DNA of 64,000 nt from Hypanus sabinus (taxonomy: Eukaryota). Below the pieces are notes generated by a model. It did not search any database, was not told the DNA's origin, and was given only the letters and a program-made list of their open reading frames with translations. Location: assembly GCF_030144855.1 (NCBI RefSeq), contig NC_082721.1, forward strand, positions 82,708,001 to 82,772,000, read 5' to 3'. Positions 32,530 to 50,970 of the stretch are shown here, piece after piece. Position numbers and translations under genes: made by a program. Positions within the stretch are counted from its first letter, which is position 1, and every line of letters begins with the position of its first letter.

Positions 32530-32810
32530 CACAGGACAGAATGGTTAGTACAACGCTCTACAGTACAGGCGAACAGGGATCATTTCCTGCCACTGCCTGG
32601 AAGGAGTCTGTACATTCTCCCTGTCACCATATGGGTTTCCTCCGGGTGCCCTGGTTTCCTCCCACAGTCACCGGTTGGGAGGTTAATTGGTCATTGTAAA
32701 CTGTCCTATGATCAGGCAAGGGTTAAATCAGGGGATTACTGGGCGGTGTGGCTCGAAGGGCCAGAACGGCCTATTCTGTGCTGTATCTCAATAAATAAAA
32801 ATAAATATAA
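32530..32810 (+). mobile_element. HE1-like SINE
   Basis: gggtttcctccgggtgccctggtttcctcccacagtc core and A-rich tail. Confidence 0.75.
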
Positions 32811-35538: not shown

Positions 35539-35825
35539 CTGCAATACACACAAGAAATTCACTGCACATTGGTTTGCCTTGGCATGTTTCACACACTGAT
35601 GGAATGATGCAAAACTGACTAAACCTTTATGAGCCTCTGTACACAACCAGGAGTTCATCAAACCCACGCCAGTATCCGCAATTCCATACTTTGCCCTTTC
35701 TCTGAACTTCTCCTGCTCTAAAGGCACCCCAAAAATTTAACTCTTTGCTCCTCCCATGAGCAGTGATACAGGAGTGAACTCTCACTGACCTCTCAAGAGT
35801 GTGATCTCAACGAGCGGCAGGTTTG

Positions 35826-36250
35826 GGGCAGCACGGTAGTGTAGTGGTTAGCACAACGCTTCACAGTGCGGGCGATCCCTGTTCAATTCCCACTGCTGCC
35901 TGTAAGGAGTTTATATATTTTCCCTGTGACCGTGTGGGTTTCCTCCCACAGTCCAAAGACATACAGGTTGGTGGGTTACAGAAACATAGAAAACCTAGAG
36001 CACAATATAGGCCCTTTGGCCCACATAGTGGTTTTGAACATGTCCTTACTTGTGAAATTATCTAGGGTTACCCACAGCCCTCTTTTTTCTGAGCTCCATG
36101 TACCTGTCCAGGTGTCTCTTAAAAGACCCTATTGTATTTGCCTCCACCACCATTGGGCCATTGTAAATTGTCATGCGATTAGGCTTGGGTTAAAATGGTG
36201 GATCGGTGGGCAATGTGACTCGAAGGGCTATTCTGTGTTGTAGTCTTTCA
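35826..36250 (+). mobile_element. HE1-like SINE interrupted by a minus-strand CR1 tail (about 35978-36150)
   Basis: head ggggcagcacggtagtgtagtggttagcac; SINE resumes at attgggccattgtaaattgtc. Confidence 0.75.
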
Positions 36251-37218: not shown

Positions 37219-37530
37219 AATACGTTTGCAGAGTCACAGAGGCATTTGCGATCTGTGTGGTCGTTTTAGAGTCCAAGATCAACTCTGCCAAGCAGGTGTA
37301 CACCATTCCATCATCAGAAATACTTGCAATGAAATGAAGGACATTCTTCAATGGACCATCTTCCGGGAGACCTGGGTCCTCTGTGGAATTACGTTGAACA
37401 GTCTCACTCCCTCTGAGCCAGGTGAGTACGAGTCTGTTCTGTGGATAGACCTTCGGGCCAGTGCACTCCAGCTGATATGGTTTGTTAACTTCCAGCACTT
37501 CAGGAGCTGGAACAATGCTTAAGTTTCGAT
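37219..37530 (-). CDS. Exon 3, Ig domain D2
   Basis: tttgacag|at, t|gtgagt; LECTGPKVYPQNRLVLTWLRG and YTCLAELIL, typical of ICAM D2. Confidence 0.93.
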
Positions 37531-37589: not shown

Positions 37590-38280
37590 GTGTCAAACAG
37601 AAGAAAATCTGCAGATGCTGGAAATCCGCAGCAACACACAGAAAGTGCTGGAGGAACACAGCAGGCCAGGCAGCATCTATGGAAAAGAGTAAACAGTCAA
37701 CGCTTCGAGTCGAGACCCTTAATCAGGTTTGGTAGGAGACGGGGAGAAGTCTGAACAAGAAGGTGGAAGGAGGGTAGGAACAAGTACACGTTGGTAAGTG
37801 ATAGGGGAAACTGGGAGAGGGGGAGGGGTGAAGTTAAGAGCAAGGAGGTTAATTGGTGAAAGGGATATAGTACAGGGCTGGGGAAGGTGGAATTGGACAG
37901 GAGAGGACTGAAGATGAGGGAAGAAAGGGGAGGGGGAGGAGCACCACAGGGAGGAGATGGGCAGGTAGGGAGATGAAGTGAGAGAGGGAAACAGGAATGG
38001 GGAATGGTGAAGGAGAGGAGGGGGCAATTCACTGTTCATGTCATCACATCGAAGGTTACCCAGACAATATTTATTTCATCTGATCTCCTTGCCTGCCCAG
38101 TTTCACCCATCATCTGTCACCTTGTACATCCTTCTTCCCTCGCCCAACTTCTCATTGGGATTTCTCTCCTTCCCTCTCAGTCCTGAAGAAGGATCTCGGC
38201 CCAAAATGTTGACTGTTTACTCTTTTCCACAGATGCTGCCGGTCCTGCTGATTTCCTCCAGCATTTTGTACGTGTCCCAC
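37590..38280. mobile_element. Penelope-like remnant with inverted termini
   Basis: terminal unit on the minus strand at 37600-37720 and on the plus strand at 38178-38280, purine-rich spacer; decayed hammerhead at 38178-38215. Confidence 0.7.
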
Positions 38281-40579: not shown

Positions 40580-41483
40580 CTGGTTGACCACCCCTTATCC
40601 GAAATGCTTGGGGTCACAAGCGTTTCGGAGTTTGGAATTTGAATTTTGGAATATTTAATGAGATAGCTTGGGAACGGCAACATTTCCAAGTCTGAATTTA
40701 TGAGATCAGTCTTTGTCTTAAAAATGTTCATCGCACATGTACTTAACACTAAGAATTATTCCATACTATTAATGTGATGTGTGCAGGGTAACACTGCAGC
40801 ATTGGGAGAATACCTGAATCAGCTGTTGAACAACAACAAACAACGACAGGCTTTCAGTCTCCACCCACGGTGCTGTGGTTTGATGAAAAGTTTACAGTAC
40901 ACTGTATGTGTATTCTGCTTGTTTTAGGTTTTATGTAAAATATATAAAAAATCACCATTGCAAACTTGTTCTGGTTTTAGATTTTCATTAGCGACCACCT
41001 GGGCAAACTTAACAATGTGTTTTTCTGCCGTTTTGTGATCAGCAGATGCTTTATCTTAAAAATTTTAACTCTTTAAAAATATAATGTTGTGCCTTTTTAA
41101 AATCTCTGTAATTTCCTCACTGAATATTCAGAAATCCCTTCAATTTCAGTTTGACATGATATATCTTTGCTTACTTCAAGATCAGCATACCGTCAAACAG
41201 CACGTGTTCACTGACACTGATGAATCCACTTTTTCGAGATGATTGAGAGCTTCATTTTTCACTTTATGCAGTGTTTTCCCATCCTTCATTACACGTGAGG
41301 TCACTTCTCAGAACTGCCCGTGAAGCACAGACACATGTGCATTGCCTGGGAACTTTCACAGCGTCTTGTGGAGTTTTCCATTTGTAATGTCATGTCAGCA
41401 TTCAAAAACAAATAAATAAATAAATAAATGGTTTTCAGAAGTTTTCAGATTTTGTAATTTTGGATAAGAGGGTAATCAAACTT
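40580..41483 (-). mobile_element. Tigger/pogo-derived element
   Basis: TA-ctggttgaccaccccttatccgaa TIR with its inverse at 41460-41485; internal CENP-B HTH remnant (KTLHKVKNE..., KASADHKTAE). Confidence 0.7.
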
Positions 41484-41941
41484 TATTGACTCCCGTTTCG
41501 TGTCTGTTTCTATTAATTACTAATTTCCTGACCCGTTGTGTTCCTCCAGCACTTTGTATCTGTGGAACAGAAAACTGGTATGAATTCTGATCGATGGTCC
41601 TTGGTTCAGTTTGATTTTCGATCAGTTCAGCTGGTGAGTGGGGAAGTTGGGAGCTTGGTGATTTTCAGTGCTGATACCAGCAGTCCAGTGTCTACACAAT
41701 GTTTGTGAGAATCGGTGTAATGGCCCGGATGCAGAGCATTCAAGGAATGAGATGGTAGAGTGTGATTAAGTTGCAGCACTGTATTCAGCAGCTCAATAAT
41801 ATCATTGGAATATCGGTCTGGAATTTATATGCCGTATTAAATTTAAATCTTGTCTCAATTCTTGTAGATGACAGTACATTATCTTCCAGATTTAATTTTC
41901 TTTAAAGAAGGTGCTTGTGGATGTCCAGTGAGAGTTCTGCA

Positions 41942-42045
41942 TTATTGTTGGGCTTGGTTTCTGCTGTTAGTTGGGTTCTTCCAAAAGTAGTAGATCGGAC
42001 CAATAACAAATAAACATGCAAAGATAGTTACCACATATATCCAAG
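41942..42045 (-). CDS. Candidate alternative terminal transmembrane exon in intron 2
   Basis: ctccag|CT TGG is phase 1; encodes WIYVVTIFACLFVIGPIYYFWKNPTNSRNQAQQ*; no expression evidence. Confidence 0.4.
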
Positions 42046-42274
42046 CTGGAGATCCAGATTGATCGATAAAACCAATCACAAAATCAACAGTACAGGTCAT
42101 TGACGGTCCCAGGTAAACACTTTATAACAGAAGTACTCTTCTGATCACTCTTACCTCTGAGAATGCTTCCTCAGTAGACAGAAGTGTCAGGCGAGCTTAT
42201 AATGATCAAGTATGTAATCAATCTATCTATTTATATATTTATTTAACTATTTGCTTACTCACTTCCTTATTCAG

Positions 42275-42530
42275 ATCCAGCACGGAATAGGCCTTTCTGG
42301 CCCTTTGAGCCAGGCTGCCCAGCAGTCCCCTGATTTAATCAGAGGACAATTTACCTACCAATCAGTGCGTCTTTGTGATGTTGGCGGAAACAAGAGCACC
42401 CAGGGGAAACTCACATGGTCACAGGGAGAATGTACAAACTGCTTACAGGCAGTGATGGGAATTGAACCTGGGTCACCTGTACATGTAAAGTGTTGTGCTA
42501 ACCACTACACTAGTGTGCCACCCACAAACA
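42275..42530 (-). mobile_element. HE1-like SINE
   Basis: reverse complement of the head (gtgctaaccactacac) and 3' block. Confidence 0.7.
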
Positions 42531-42946
42531 TCCTGGGGAAATGGACTACCCAATGAGCTCCCAGATAGTCAGATATAAACGAGGTTAATCATCTGCTACA
42601 TTCCATACTTCAGGTGAAGCAAGTCCAGTTCCTTCACTGGCCCAACACTCTGGACTGTGAAATATCAACACACATTCCCTGATTTGAGACTCTCTGAACT
42701 TCCTTACTCCATTTCTGTAGAATTATCTTTGTACAATGTCAATATCAAACCCTCTTTCAGTCTGTGAACTCATTGTGGGGGAGTGAAGTGTAAATCCATT
42801 TCCCAGCAGGCTGTTCTCTACCTCACCTGATACATGACAGCATCTTTCTATGTAACGTTTTCAAATGACACATAATTTCATTTTACTTCCTTTCATCCTG
42901 TTGTACTCTGCTATGGGATGTGATCAGAACAAGAGATGTCACTTAC

Positions 42947-43222
42947 TGTACACTGGGAGCACCCGTTTGTTTTCCTTCATTGTGGGTTTTGCAGATGGAC
43001 AGATTACAGTACAGGGCACTGACAGATCCCATTTCTGGACACTCAGAAATCGGTCTGTAATCCACTTATCACCGTGAGTTCTGTTGGCAATTAACCCTGC
43101 TTTATATTCCACAATTATCGACGCATTCTTACACGTTGTACTGCAGGTCACCTCCAGGGACTCCCCGAATTCCACCGCTTGACGGCTTGTATTGACCAAA
43201 ACCTCAAATCCATTCAGTTTAT
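42947..43222 (-). CDS. Exon 2, ICAM N-terminal Ig domain D1
   Basis: ctggcag|at acceptor, a|gtaagt donor; CSTTC and CTVIC double-disulfide motifs; ends PVY. Confidence 0.93.
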
Positions 43223-43504
43223 CTGCCAGAGACACACAGGGAAATGGAAAACATTTAGTGTAGTCCTGGGTGCAGTTTTGATCTCTGTATCTGCATCTCA
43301 GTTCAAACATGTAATGTATTGCTCTCTAGTTATTATATATATATATATATAATATACAGCATATTATCTAATATAACTACCATGTAGACATCCACAACAG
43401 AGGAAATTTTAAATTATGAAGGATTTCTTACTGTTGTGAAATAATAATTTTCCTGACAAGGGGGAGGGGTTCATTCTCCCTGGCATGTGAACCTTGTGGC
43501 GGTG

Positions 43505-43975
43505 AAACTCTTTCACACACAACTGCTGAAAGAATTCAGCAGGCTGGGTAGCATTTATGCAAAAGAGTGACAAGTTGATATTTTAGGCTGAGACCCTTCA
43601 TCTGGACTGGAAAAAGATGAGAAATCAGTGTAAAAAGTTGGAGGGAGGGGAGGAAGAAGTATAAAGTGGTAGGTGATAGGTGAAACCGGAAGGTGGGGAG
43701 GGGTGAAGTAAGGAACTGAGTAGTGAAAGAAATAAAGGGCTGAGGAAGGGGGAATTTGATCGAGAGGAATGAAGGCCATGGAAGAAGGGGAAGGGGAGGA
43801 GCACTAGAGGGAGCTGGTGGGCAGGTACGGAGATGAGGCAAAAGAGAGAAACAGGCAAGGAGAACGGTGAAGGAGTGGGTTGCAATTTCTTGAGGAATCA
43901 ATGTTCATGCCATCAGGTTGCAGGCTACCCAGGTGGAATATAAGGTGTTGTCTTCTCTGTGGTGGTTGTAAGACT
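43505..43975 (-). mobile_element. Neptune-type Penelope-like 3' end
   Basis: QHLIFHLGSLQPDGMNID in ORF 43804-44244, then the pyrimidine tract and decayed hammerhead near 43575-43615. Confidence 0.75.
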
Positions 43976-45369: not shown

Positions 45370-48300
45370 GAAAGAGGTGGAGGATAAATGCGTGGCTGAG
45401 GGATTGGAATAGGGGGCAGGGATTCAAGTTTCTGGATCATTGGGACCTCTTTTGGGGCAAGTGTGACCTTTACAGAAAGGACGGGTTTCTTGAATCCTAG
45501 GGGGACCAATATCCTGGCAGGTAGGTTTAATAGAGCTGTAAGGGAGGGTTTAAACTAATTTGGCAGGGGGATGGGAACAGGAATGATGGAGCGGAGGAGA
45601 GGAAAAACAGAAATAGAACTAAGGTAGTGAGCGGTAAGGATGTCAGGAAGGACAGATAATGGAGCAATTTTGCAGCCATTGGGATGAGCTGCAGTGCAAT
45701 AAAGTTGCAGTGCAATCAATGCCAAATGTACCAATACTGGACTTAAGGTGTTATACTTAAATGCACACAGCATAAGGAATACGGTGGATGATCTTGTTGT
45801 ACAGTTACAGATTGGCAGGTATGATATTGTGGCCATCACTGAGACGTGGCTAAAGGATGCATGTCTCTGGGAGCTGAATGTCCAATGATACACGGTGTAT
45901 CAGAAGGATAGGCAGGTAGATAGAGGGGGTGGAGGGGCTTTAATGCTAAGAAATTATATTAAATCATTAGAAAGTGTTGACATATGAGCAGAAGGTATAG
46001 AATCTTTATGGGTGGAGCTAAGAAATCGCAGGGGTAAAAGGACCCTGATGGCAGTTATCTACAGGCCTCCAAATAACTGCAGTTGTGTGGACTACAAATT
46101 ACAACAGGAGATAGAAAAGGCTTGCTAGAAGGGCAGTGTTATGATAATTGTCAGGGATTTTAACATGCGAGTGGATTGGGAAAATTAGGTCGGCACTGGA
46201 TCTCAAGAGAGAGAATTTGTAGAATGTCCACGAGATGGCTTTTTAGAACAGCTTGTTGAGCCCACTAGGGGATCGGCTGTACTGGATTGGGTATTGTGTA
46301 ATGAACCAGAGGTGATTAGGGAGATGGAGGTGAAGGAACCCTTAGGAGACAGTGATCACAACATGATTGAGTTCACTGTGAAATTTGAGAAAGAGCTGAA
46401 ATCCGATGTGTCGGTATTTCAGTGGAGTAAAGGAAATTACAGTGGCATGAGAGAGGAACTGGCCAAGGTTGACTGGAAAGGGACACTAGCAGGAAGGATG
46501 GCAGAGCAGCAATGGCTGGAGTTTATGCGAGAAGTGAGGAAGGTGCAAGACAGATATATTCCAAAGGAGATGAAATTTTCGAATGGAAAAAGGATGCAAC
46601 CATGGCTGACAAGAGAAGTCAAAGCCAAAGTAAAAGCAAAGCAGAGGGCATACAAGGAAGCAATACTTAGTGGGAAGACAGAGGATTGGGAAGATTTTAA
46701 AAGCTTACAAACGGAAACTAAGAAGGTCATTAAGAGTGAAAAGTTGAAATATGATAGGAAGCTAGCAAATAATATCAAAGTCGATAATAAAAGCTTTTTC
46801 AAGTATATAAAGAGTAAAAGACAGGTGAGAGTAGATATAGGACCGATAGAAGATGAAGCTGGAGAAATTGTAATGGGAGATAAGGAGATGGCGGAGGAAC
46901 TGAACGAGTATTTTACATCAGTCTTCACAGAGGAAGACTTCAGCACTATACTGGACATTCAAGGGTGTCAGGGAATCGAAATATGCACAGTCACAATTAC
47001 GACAGAGAAAGTACTCAGGAAACTGAATAGTCTAAGGGTAGATAAATCTCCAGGACCAAATGGAATGCACCCTCATTTTCTGGAGGAAGTAGCAGTGGAG
47101 ATTGCAGAGGCACTAGCAATGATCTTTCAAAAGTTGATAGATTCTGGCCTGGTTCCGGAGGACTGGAAGTTTGCAAATGTCACTCCGCTATTTAAGAAGT
47201 GGGCAATGAAGCAAAAGGGAAATTACAGACCTGTTAGCTTGACATCGGTGGTTGGGAAGTTGTTGGAGTTGATTGTCAAGGATGAGGTTACAGAGTACCT
47301 GGAGGCATATGACAAGATAGGCAGAACTCAGCATGTTTTCCTTAAAGGAAAATCCTGCCTGACAAACCTAGTGCAATTTTTTGAGGAAATTACAAGTAGG
47401 CCAGACAAGGGAGATGCAGTGGATGTTGTGTATTTGAATTTTCAGAAGGCCTTTGACAAGGTGCCACACATGAGGCTGCTAAACAAGATAAGAGCCCATG
47501 CAATTACAGGAAAGTTACATATGTGGATAGAGTGTTGGTTGATTGGCAGAAAACAGAGAGTGGGAATAAAGGGATCCCATTCTGGTTGGCTGCCAGTTAA
47601 CAGTGGTGTTCCACAGGGGTCTGTGTTGGGGCCGCTTCTTTTTACGTTGTATATCAATGATTTGGATTATGGAATAGATGGCATTGTGGCTAAGTTTGCT
47701 GATAATACAAAGATAGGTGGAGGGGCCGGTAGTGTTGAGGAAACAGAGTCTGCAGAGAGACTTGGATAGATTGGGGGAATGGGCAAAGAAGTGGCAAATG
47801 AATTACAATGTCAGAAAGTGTACGGTCATGCACTTTGGTAGAAGAAATAAATGGGCAGACTATTATTTAAATGGGGAGAGAATTCAAAGTTCTGAGATGC
47901 ATCGGGACTTGGGAGTCCTCCTGCAGGATACCCTTAAGGTTAACCTCCAGGTTGAGTCAGTGGTGAAGAAGGTGAATGCAATGTTGGCATTCATTTCTAG
48001 AGGAATAGAGTATAGGAGCAGGGATGTGATGTTGAGGCTCTATAAGGCACTGGTAAGACCTCACTTGGAATACTGTGTGCAGTTTTGGGCTCCTTATTTA
48101 AGAAAGGATGTGCTGACGTTGGAGAAGGTTCAGAGAAGATTCACTAGAATGATTCCGGGAATGAGAGAGTTAACATATGAGGAACATTTCTCCGCTCTTG
48201 GACTGTACTCCTTGGAGTTTAGAAGAATGAGGGTGGACCTTATAGAAACATTTCGAATGTTGAAAGGCATGGACAGGGTGGATGTGGCAAAGTTGTTTCC

Positions 48301-48625
48301 CATGGTGAGGGAGCCTAGTACGAGAGGACATGATTTGAGGATTGCAGGGCGCCCATTCAGAACAGAGATGCGAAAAAAATTTTTTAGCCAGAAGGTGGTG
48401 AATCTATGGAATTTGTTGCCACGGGCGGCAGTGGAGGCCGGGTCATTGGGTGTATTTAAGACAGAGATTGATAGGTATCTGAGTAGCCAGGGCATCAAAG
48501 GTTATGATGAGAAGTCGGGGGAATGGGACTAAATGGGAGATTGGATCAGCTCATGATGAAATGGCAGAGTAGACTCGATGGGCCGAATGGCCGACTTCTG
48601 CTCCTTTGTCTTATGGTCTTAACTA
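45370..48625 (+). mobile_element. Long CR1 LINE: end of ORF1 plus nearly complete ORF2 (APE endonuclease and RT)
   Basis: YLNAHSIRN...AITETW endonuclease start near 45750; ORFs 46294-47769 (491 aa) and 47717-48532 (271 aa) separated by one frameshift; gtcttatggtctta tail. Confidence 0.92.
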
Positions 48626-50039: not shown

Positions 50040-50970
50040 ACTCCGGTGATTGCAGCTGCGGGAACCTGGAACAACAAACTCAGCGGGTCGGTCGCTTCTG
50101 TGTCGGGAAATTGAACTGACGGCGTTTCCAGAGGAGACCTTGCATCAGGCGCGTTATGGTGACTGGTCAGACTGTTATATCGGAAGGAAGTACAGGAACT
50201 CGGGTTGTGTGCACTTTGGTGGCTGTTGCAGTTTCACACAAAGATACGGAGTTGTAAACGGAGCCAAAAACGGACCCGCGGTCAGACTCAGCCCAGCGCA
50301 CACCAGTGATCGAGTGTAGAGAGTACTGAGAGAATAGTGACCAGGGACTGAGAAACGGAATGAAAATGCTTCTGACCTAAAGAGTAAAATTATGAGATAT
50401 ATTCTTAAATTTAAATTGAATTCCTGAATCATGCAACTATTTTGCTCGGTGCCTAGTTTTCATTTCTATCTTCCTCGTCATTCTTCAGCGGAATTCAAGT
50501 TAACGTAAAGTTTATGTTTTGCCAAAAAGAATTTTGCCGAGGAAATTGGAAACGAGATACGGTCCATGTCCGCTCAGTAGCGCACAATCCGAGATATACA
50601 GTTAGTATGTACAGTTACTCTCTAACGCTGCGTGACTCCACGCAAATATATTGATCATATTTAAAACAAGTTTACCTACCTGCTACCACGAAGAGGAAAG
50701 CGACAAGGGAAATCGACCTGAAATACATAATAATCAAATCTCGAACGAAAACCTGAAACGAATTTATTAACCTAAGTCCCGAAATCAACGCGAAGAGCCA
50801 GTACTGGTCTGTTTGGCGCTTCGAGCGATGTAAGAGGTGGCAGCGCTTCCGGGCCGTGACTAGGGATCTTTATTAACATTCATACTTCTACAGTTGTTGC
50901 ATAACTACCGATCGACTATGAAAATAGGGTTCATGGTCAGCAAACAGGACCGACGGGTGAATGAACGGTG
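50040..50970. promoter_or_regulatory. CpG-rich promoter region of the ICAM-like gene, possibly bidirectional
   Basis: dense CpG compared with the flanks, non-repetitive, contains exon 1 and an ETS-type cttccgg at 50846-50852. Confidence 0.6.
50680..50728 (-). CDS. Exon 1, signal peptide MYFRSISLVAFLFVVA
   Basis: ATG with A at -3, hydrophobic core, donor G|gtaggt, phase 1 matches exon 2; lies in a CpG-rich region. Confidence 0.8.

What the first reader, a model, noticed from the sequence alone, without database searches (positions are those of the whole stretch)
41942..42100. Hidden in-phase transmembrane exon in intron 2: possible one-Ig-domain membrane isoform
Seen: non-repetitive intron sequence encodes PAWIYVVTIFACLFVIGPIYYFWKNPTNSRNQAQQ*, a 21-residue hydrophobic helix with aromatic belts and a stop-transfer lysine. 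It is too short for the ORF track. The AG at 42046-42047 is phase 1, so exon 2 would splice in frame and give leader-D1-TM-tail (142 aa). An ATTAAA lies about 50 nt past the stop (41891-41896). Inference: either an alternative last exon producing a mini-ICAM that carries only the integrin-binding domain, or the relic end of an older gene copy. It also reads as a standalone 52-aa ORF from the ATG at 42100.
Basis: partly seen in the sequence, partly recalled or inferred. Interest (0 to 1): 0.7.

Follow-up and report, generated by a model that had tools for sequence, protein, structure and literature searches.

The report
Probable relic membrane-anchor exon in stingray ICAM intron
An intron of a stingray ICAM/VCAM-like adhesion gene holds a short open reading frame that looks like a membrane anchor and could splice in frame, but it is most likely a decayed leftover of a family anchor exon, and nothing shows it is used.

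Summary
It includes the 52-aa ORF, a 21-residue hydrophobic helix, a phase-1 AG that joins the D1 exon in frame (142 aa), the TAA stop and an ATTAAA 45 nt further on.

The helix and the phase are not beyond chance. About 0.3-1.8 such pseudo-exons are expected in this gene's introns.

Two results go further.
- The short tail (NPTNSRNQ) matches the cytoplasmic tail of a skate ICAM-like protein at 7 of 8 residues (P about 0.0015-0.004 against null ORFs). The conserved KTGxY motif next to the membrane is missing, and a family profile gives only 4-5 bits.
- An NCBI model from Hemitrygon akajei (XP_072925445.1) ends, after a D1 exon, in 31 residues that match window 41987-41895 at 28/31. It reads the other frame, starts downstream of the helix, and stops inside the ATTAAA.

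No protein of 50-159 aa with this D1 was found. RNA-like runs hold words of the 1.7 kb around D1 but none of the candidate.

My odds are relic family exon about 0.5, chance about 0.3, and real one-Ig membrane isoform about 0.15. The scan's only other note on this stretch is the same first-reader finding logged again.

The parts
42046..42047 (-). Candidate 3' splice site (CAG), phase 1 relative to the open frame
   Evidence: Read directly. Pyrimidine fraction upstream is 0.60, T fraction 0.35 and the longest pyrimidine run 5. That is the lower edge of this gene's seven real acceptors, which range 0.60-0.90.
41942..42045 (-). Candidate terminal coding exon: (T)WIYVVTIFACLFVIGPIYYFWKNPTNSRNQAQQ plus TAA
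   Evidence: It is the only AG-to-stop reading in this stretch longer than 20 codons when joined to D1.
41981..42043 (-). 21-residue hydrophobic helix WIYVVTIFACLFVIGPIYYFW, followed by Lys
   Evidence: Kyte-Doolittle 19-residue mean is 2.13. That ranks about 24th of 191 such six-frame segments in the window. It is near the bottom of the family's TM range of 2.0-3.65. The gene's real TM scores 2.88.
41954..41977 (-). Tail motif NPTNSRNQ, 7/8 identical to the cytoplasmic tail NPTPSRNQ of Leucoraja erinacea ICAM-like XP_055520210.1
   Evidence: P = 0.0013 against shuffles of the tail. P = 0.0018-0.0042 against simulated ORF ends. P = 0.0015 among 1,967 TM-like null ORFs.
41895..41987 (-). Stretch homologous to the last 31 codons of Hemitrygon akajei XP_072925445.1, read one base downstream of the TM frame. 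In that frame the window has a TAA at 41969-41967, and it has AC where an acceptor AG would be needed (41988-41987).
   Evidence: tblastn 28/31, E 2e-13. Sequence, name.
41891..41896 (-). ATTAAA poly(A)-type hexamer. The stop codon of the H. akajei model falls inside the matching hexamer.
   Evidence: Such hexamers occur 1.4 times per kb on this strand, so this alone is weak evidence.
42947..43222 (-). D1 exon (ICAM N-terminal Ig domain), phase 1 at both ends, strong donor ACA|GTAAGT
50682..50728 (-). Leader exon MYFRSISLVAFLFVVA plus G
   Evidence: Found by the pseudo-exon scan. 15 of 18 residues match the start of the H. akajei models. Donor G|GTAGGT.
37219..37530 (-). D2 exon, the normal splice partner of D1
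   Evidence: tblastn 73-83% identity to ray proteins. Splice sites read.
20646..20770 (-). The gene's real TM/tail terminal exon GDDWKMALMISLPILMLLLLLVVAYVQINRARKTQHYCTRS* (3' coordinate approximate)
   Evidence: Top hit of the family TM/tail HMM at 17.6 bits.

Best explanation
The stretch is a diverged and partly decayed copy of the ICAM/VCAM-family TM plus cytoplasmic-tail terminal exon. It was left in the D1-D2 intron by the exon and gene shuffling that marks this tandem family. It keeps the family's phase-1 acceptor, the Trp that opens the helix, a hydrophobic span and a piece of the distal tail motif. It has lost the juxtamembrane KTGxY block and ends early.

Shown: the sequence features, the tail match, and the homologous stretch annotated as a terminal exon in another frame in Hemitrygon akajei.

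Inferred: its descent from a family exon. Also inferred is that remnants of a terminal exon (acceptors, ATTAAA) could let it act now and then as a cryptic intronic polyadenylation exon. In that case the protein made would depend on which AG a species happens to have. In this genome only the AG at 42047-42046 gives a long reading, which is D1 plus TM.
For: - The tail NPTNSRNQ is 7/8 identical to the skate family tail. P is 0.0013, 0.0018-0.0042 and 0.0015 among TM-like null ORFs. The joint P with the family HMM score is 0.0005.
- About 2 TM-like null ORFs are expected in introns 2-7.
- Trp sits just before the hydrophobic core, as in 9 or so of the 15 family TM exons aligned, and in the gene's own exon.
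- H. akajei XP_072925445.1 places its last coding exon on the homologous DNA directly after a D1 exon, and it stops inside the ATTAAA.
- The family swaps TM/tail exons between near-identical paralogues. P0007 and P0039 are 87% identical up to VKG and then carry different anchors.
- Domain units are duplicated in tandem (P0024).
Against: - The family TM/tail HMM gives only 4.4-5.1 bits. About 5% of TM-like null ORFs do as well.
- There is no DNA-level likeness to the gene's real terminal exon.
- No relic Ig exon lies upstream of it in the intron.
- The tail match is eight residues, was noticed post hoc, and needs an in-frame loss of about 12 codons.
- A 59-codon open frame in an old relic is somewhat unexpected.
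- Whether the H. akajei model rests on RNA or on ab initio extension is unknown.
Confidence: 0.5

Rival explanations
1. Chance. A T-rich intronic stretch happens to read as a hydrophobic helix with an in-phase AG and a nearby ATTAAA. The tail match and the H. akajei exon are coincidences.
For: - 0.3 (strict) to 1.8 (relaxed) such pseudo-exons are expected in introns 2-7.
- The window holds 191 six-frame segments with a KD mean of at least 1.6, and the candidate ranks about 24th.
- Poly(A) hexamers occur 1.4 times per kb.
- The family HMM score is not significant.
- No homologue of the 59-aa stretch was found.
- RNA-like runs hold none of its words.
Against: - The tail match to family tails has P about 0.0015-0.004, and 0.0005 jointly with the HMM score.
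- The homologous DNA is annotated as a terminal coding exon after D1 in a sister genus.
- Under the strict criteria the other two minus-strand hits in the window are both real exons, the leader and the real TM.
Confidence: 0.3
2. A functional alternative last exon. D1 splices to 42045, the transcript is cleaved after the ATTAAA, and a 142-aa type I membrane protein is made that carries only the integrin-binding-type D1 domain and a 12-residue tail.
For: - The junction is in frame, with an intact 34-codon reading and a stop-transfer Lys.
- The acceptor lies within the range of the gene's real ones.
- The ATTAAA lies 45 nt past the stop.
- A terminal exon is annotated on the homologous DNA in H. 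akajei.
- DNA-like runs of two related organisms hold more words of the 241-nt stretch (0.46-0.59) than of the surrounding 1.7 kb (0.30-0.37). This rests on only 22 words and is not significant.
Against: - No protein of 50-159 aa with this D1 was found in the 5.8-billion-sequence set.
- RNA-like runs X1, X7 and X8 hold 0.07, 0.02 and 0.00 of the words of 41700-43400, but 0.00 of 41860-42100.
- The H. akajei model skips the helix and uses another frame.
- The tail lacks the family's conserved KTGxY block.
- The helix holds Gly-Pro and sits at the low end of family hydrophobicity.
- From my own knowledge, not tested here: ICAM D1 expressed without D2 folds poorly.
Confidence: 0.15
3. A standalone 52-aa membrane micropeptide translated from the ATG at 42100.
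For: An ATG-initiated ORF exists.
Against: No homologue was found. The exact sequence is not on record anywhere in the collection. There is no sign of its own transcript. ORFs of this size are abundant by chance.
Confidence: 0.02

Closest known systems
TM plus cytoplasmic-tail terminal exon of elasmobranch ICAM/VCAM-like genes (e.g. Leucoraja erinacea XP_055520210.1, Pristis pectinata XP_051897857.1, and this gene's own exon at about 20770)
   Same: Phase-1 start a few codons before a Trp, a single hydrophobic span, an aromatic and basic end to the helix, and the distal tail motif N-P-T-x-S-R-N-Q.
   Different: It lacks the juxtamembrane R/K-rich KTGxY(K/N)V block. The tail is 12 residues instead of 30-60. 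The family HMM is not significant, and there is no DNA-level likeness to the resident exon.
Terminal exon of Hemitrygon akajei XP_072925445.1 ('intercellular adhesion molecule 4-like', NCBI model)
   Same: Homologous DNA (28/31 residues in that frame), in the same position directly after a D1 exon, ending at the same ATTAAA.
   Different: It starts at the equivalent of 41986, 3' of the helix, and reads the other frame, so it has no membrane anchor. In the window that frame has a stop at 41969-41967 and the acceptor position reads AC.
Intronic polyadenylation / alternative last exons that truncate Ig-superfamily and other receptors (own knowledge: immunoglobulin mu secreted versus membrane forms, soluble FLT1)
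   Same: A composite terminal exon inside an intron, competing with the downstream acceptor, would shorten the protein.
   Different: In the known cases use is shown by transcripts. Here it is not shown, and the product would gain an anchor rather than lose one.
Relic exons in birth-and-death Ig-family clusters with swapped TM/tail exons (own knowledge: KIR/LILR-type paired receptors). Within this family, Heptranchias perlo XP_067829028.1 versus XP_067829025.1.
   Same: Near-identical ectodomains are joined to unrelated TM/tail exons. Earlier scan notes report tandem and inverted duplications in the cluster.
   Different: Here the extra TM/tail-like exon lies inside an intron after D1, not at a gene end.

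Membership tests
ICAM family (the host gene) | N-terminal ICAM-type Ig domain (Pfam PF03921 ICAM_N) | tested here: met
   The D1 exon ORF scores 31.9 bits against a cut-off of 21, E 1.1e-7. It is 46-80% identical to D1 of annotated elasmobranch ICAM/VCAM-like proteins.
Family TM/cytoplasmic terminal exon | Phase-1 acceptor a few codons before the helix | tested here: met
   The AG at 42047-42046 gives a phase-1 start one codon before the Trp. The real exon starts three codons before its Trp.
Family TM/cytoplasmic terminal exon | Single hydrophobic span of about 21-25 residues opened by Trp | tested here: met
   WIYVV...YYFW has a KD mean of 2.13. The family range is 2.0-3.65, and Trp is present at that place in most members.
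Family TM/cytoplasmic terminal exon | Juxtamembrane basic block with KTGxY | tested here: not met
   It is absent. The helix is followed directly by K-NPTNSRNQAQQ*.
Family TM/cytoplasmic terminal exon | Distal tail motif N(A/P)xPxxN(P/Q)(E/Q)IP | tested here: inconclusive
   7/8 match to the skate NPTPSRNQ, P 0.0013-0.004. It is only eight residues, and the EIP part is not kept.
Family TM/cytoplasmic terminal exon | Significant match to a profile of family TM/tail exons | tested here: inconclusive
   4.4-5.1 bits. It ranks 125th of 42,543 ORFs, yet 5.4% of TM-like null ORFs do as well. The real exon scores 17.6 bits.
Expressed alternative last exon | Spliced reads across 42947|42045 | not testable with these tools
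Expressed alternative last exon | Presence in RNA assemblies | tested here: not met
   RNA-like runs X1, X7 and X8 hold 0.00 of the 22 sampled words of 41860-42100. X1 holds 0.07 of the 1.7 kb that includes D1. The runs are small (90-97 million letters) and only guessed to be RNA, so this is weak evidence.
Expressed alternative last exon | Annotated protein using the exon | tested here: not met
   No protein of 50-159 aa with this D1. No relative of the 59-aa stretch. The only model on the homologous DNA uses another frame.
Expressed alternative last exon | Poly(A) signal downstream of the stop | tested here: met
   ATTAAA at 41896-41891, 45 nt after the stop. About a 13% chance per 100 nt at the observed density.

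The most novel reading that the evidence does not exclude
Stingrays make, from a multi-domain ICAM/VCAM-like gene, a 142-aa membrane protein that carries only the ligand-binding D1 domain. They do so by splicing D1 to a recycled family TM exon in intron 2 and polyadenylating there. That would be a 'mini-ICAM' decoy or minimal adhesion ligand with no known counterpart in other vertebrates.
Probability: 0.12. Interest if true: 0.5.

Novelty: new member of a known kind. Interest (0 to 1): 0.2.

Why it matters
If it is a relic, it is one more trace of how TM/tail exons are shuffled in a fast-evolving tandem family of adhesion genes in cartilaginous fish. That is useful for annotating the cluster but not surprising.

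If the exon is used, it would show how a leftover terminal exon can be recruited to give a truncated isoform. That isoform would be soluble in one genus and membrane-bound in another, depending on a single acceptor. This would interest people who study receptor evolution and intronic polyadenylation. Nothing here yet shows use in this species.

Tried and rejected
Later work started at 41450 or masked them.
- A protein search with the 59-aa open stretch found nothing.
- A protein search with D1, limited to targets of 50-159 aa, found nothing.
- A search for other models with the H. akajei tail, limited to 184-586 aa, found only the model itself.
- An exact look-up of the 52-aa ORF and nine neighbouring ORFs found none on record.
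The orthologous introns could therefore not be read.
- DNA alignment of the candidate to the gene's real terminal exon was not significant.
- tblastn of 43 family proteins against the intron found no relic Ig exon on the sense strand. A plus-strand D1-like 21-mer at 41766-41828 (E 0.01) has no DNA-level support and is treated as chance.
- Likeness to the family's second, short-tail TM exon type (P0007 class) was not significant.
- Rfam and the tandem-repeat search found nothing.
- Two literature searches found nothing on elasmobranch ICAM isoforms.

Full report
**What is there.**

The window carries, on the minus strand, a multi-Ig ICAM/VCAM-like gene of a stingray. Its exons are:
- the leader exon, 50728-50682
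- the D1 exon, 43222-42947
- the D2 exon, 37530-37219
- further Ig exons near 35.5, 33.7, 26.3 and 23.9 kb
- a TM/tail exon starting at 20770

The D1 ORF passes Pfam ICAM_N at 31.9 bits against a cut-off of 21.

In the 5.4 kb D1-D2 intron, 42100-41942 is a 52-aa ORF inside a 59-codon open stretch. D1 ends in phase 1 at 42947 (ACA|GTAAGT). The AG at 42047-42046 starts an exon at 42045 in the same phase, giving T-WIYVVTIFACLFVIGPIYYFW-KNPTNSRNQAQQ-stop. An ATTAAA lies 45 nt past the stop. The stretch is unique within the window, has no tandem repeats and matches no Rfam family.

**Is the helix plus phase more than chance?**

No. The window has 191 six-frame segments with a Kyte-Doolittle 19-residue mean of at least 1.6, and the candidate (2.13) ranks about 24th.

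I counted 'pseudo terminal TM exons' defined as follows:
- KD mean at least 2.0
- a phase-1 AG no more than 12 codons upstream, with no stop between
- a stop no more than 45 codons downstream
- optionally, a basic residue after the core and at least 60% pyrimidines before the AG

A third-order Markov model of the window gives 5.5, 2.6 and 1.0 of these per 64 kb strand. That is 1.8, 0.8 and 0.3 in the roughly 20.7 kb of introns 2-7, any of which would 'splice in frame' because all the Ig exons are phase 1.

In the real sequence the strict filter finds three hits on the minus strand: the real TM exon, the leader exon and the candidate. It finds none on the plus strand. Poly(A) hexamers occur 1.4 times per kb. 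The candidate acceptor (pyrimidines 0.60, T 0.35) is at the weak end of the gene's seven real acceptors.

**Evidence that it descends from a family exon.**

A full-library search with D1 returned 23 elasmobranch ICAM/VCAM-like proteins. Their TM/tail ends share four features: a Trp just before the helix, the helix itself, a basic KTGxY block, and an N-rich distal motif.

The candidate has the Trp, and its tail NPTNSRNQ is 7/8 identical to NPTPSRNQ in little-skate XP_055520210.1. A match this good is rare:
- 0.13% of composition-preserving shuffles reach it
- 0.18-0.42% of simulated ORF ends reach it
- 0.15% of 1,967 TM-like null ORFs reach it

Against this:
- An HMM of 15 family TM/tail segments finds the real exon (17.6 bits) but gives the candidate only 4.4-5.1 bits. 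About 5.4% of TM-like null ORFs do as well.
- The KTGxY block is absent.
- The DNA shows no likeness to the resident terminal exon.
- No relic Ig exon lies upstream of it.

The joint null probability is about 0.0005. With about two TM-like null ORFs expected in these introns, that leaves roughly 0.001-0.003 expected by chance. I read this as moderate support for descent from a family TM/tail exon that lost about 12 codons and its distal tail.

**The sister-genus model.**

The closest D1 relative is Hemitrygon akajei XP_072925445.1, a 335-aa NCBI model with the layout leader-D1-D2-D1-tail. Its last 31 residues, ILEEPNLQQKPSPTIMQNSHWTSTSIFFKEN, match window 41987-41895 at 28/31 (E 2e-13). So the homologous DNA, in the same place right after a D1 exon, is annotated there as the terminal coding exon, and its stop lies inside the ATTAAA.

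But that exon begins at the equivalent of 41986, downstream of the helix, and is read one base downstream of the TM frame. The model therefore has no anchor. In the window that frame is closed by a TAA at 41969-41967, and the needed acceptor position reads AC. If H. akajei has AG at that spot through a C-to-G change, the TM frame there would acquire a TAG. This is inference, because the H. akajei DNA could not be fetched. Whether the model rests on RNA is also unknown.

The model shows two things. The stretch is shared by two stingray genera, and a terminal exon can be called here. It gives no support for the membrane-anchored reading.

**Expression.**

No run on record as RNA holds the stretch. 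Three small runs guessed to be RNA (X1, X7, X8) hold 0.07, 0.02 and 0.00 of the sampled words of 41700-43400, which includes D1. They hold 0.00 of the 22 words of 41860-42100.

DNA-like runs of two other organisms hold 0.46-0.59 of the words of the 241-nt stretch, against 0.30-0.37 for the 1.7 kb. With 22 words this difference is not significant.

No protein of 50-159 aa with this D1 was found in the 5.8-billion-sequence set. The 59-aa stretch has no relatives of 32-103 aa. No other model carries the H. akajei tail. These blanks are limited by the length windows of the tool.

**Context.**

The family shuffles its ends. Heptranchias XP_067829028.1 and XP_067829025.1 are 87% identical up to the last Ig domain and then carry unrelated TM/tail exons. 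H. akajei and shark models show tandem D1-D2 units. Earlier notes of this scan, which I did not check, describe tandem and inverted duplications, mini-ICAM copies and paired TM/tail variants in this genome's cluster. They also describe a frameshifted tail in this very gene. I did see that truncated reading. A stray TM/tail exon in an intron fits that history.

**Verdict.**

The mini-ICAM isoform is unproven and on balance unlikely (about 0.15). The relic reading is the best supported (about 0.5). Pure chance remains a serious rival (about 0.3). The finding is of local interest for annotating this gene family. It would become interesting only if junction reads or a conserved frame were shown.

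Noticed in passing
window 50682-50728 (-): The leader exon of the ICAM-like gene (MYFRSISLVAFLFVVA plus G, donor G|GTAGGT) was picked up by the pseudo-TM-exon scan. 15 of its 18 aligned residues match the start of the Hemitrygon akajei models.
   Followed up: partly
window 41766-41828 (+): The plus-strand reading LSCSTVFSSSIISLEYRSGIY resembles the D1 core CSTTC..I.VEYKPGI (45% over 20 aa, E 0.01 in a 5.4 kb search). It is flanked by stops and has no DNA-level likeness to D1. It is probably chance, but it sits about 115 nt from the candidate exon in convergent orientation.
   Followed up: partly
window 43514-43932 and 37635-38063: A direct repeat pair (71% identity over 440 nt, a Pro/Ser/Leu-rich element with more copies near 23.0, 48.9 and 14.5 kb) brackets the segment that holds D1 and the candidate exon.
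   Followed up: no
window 42267-42529: A SINE-like element lies between D1 and the candidate exon, with copies at 32542-32794 and 35821-35943.
   Followed up: no
window 20646-20770 (-) and 20494-20763: The real TM exon reads ...VQINRARKTQHYCTRS*. The conserved tail (YKVMNAVPHKNQILSGNDQESFPLKELNSD) continues in another frame.
   Followed up: partly
proteins P0007 / P0039 (Heptranchias perlo), P0024 (Hemitrygon akajei): Near-identical paralogues carry two unrelated TM/tail exon types: a long KTGxY tail and a short ARRLAAK...IIYFRNKRK tail. Models also have two or three tandem D1-D2 units spliced in series.
   Followed up: partly
window 42097-42120 versus 20802-20825 (-): The best local DNA match between the candidate and the real terminal exon (19/24) lies 50-75 nt upstream of both acceptors. 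It is not significant against shuffles (P about 0.1).
   Followed up: yes
window 46294-48532 (+): Long reverse-transcriptase-type ORFs (491 and 271 aa) of a LINE-like element lie inside intron 1 on the opposite strand.
   Followed up: no
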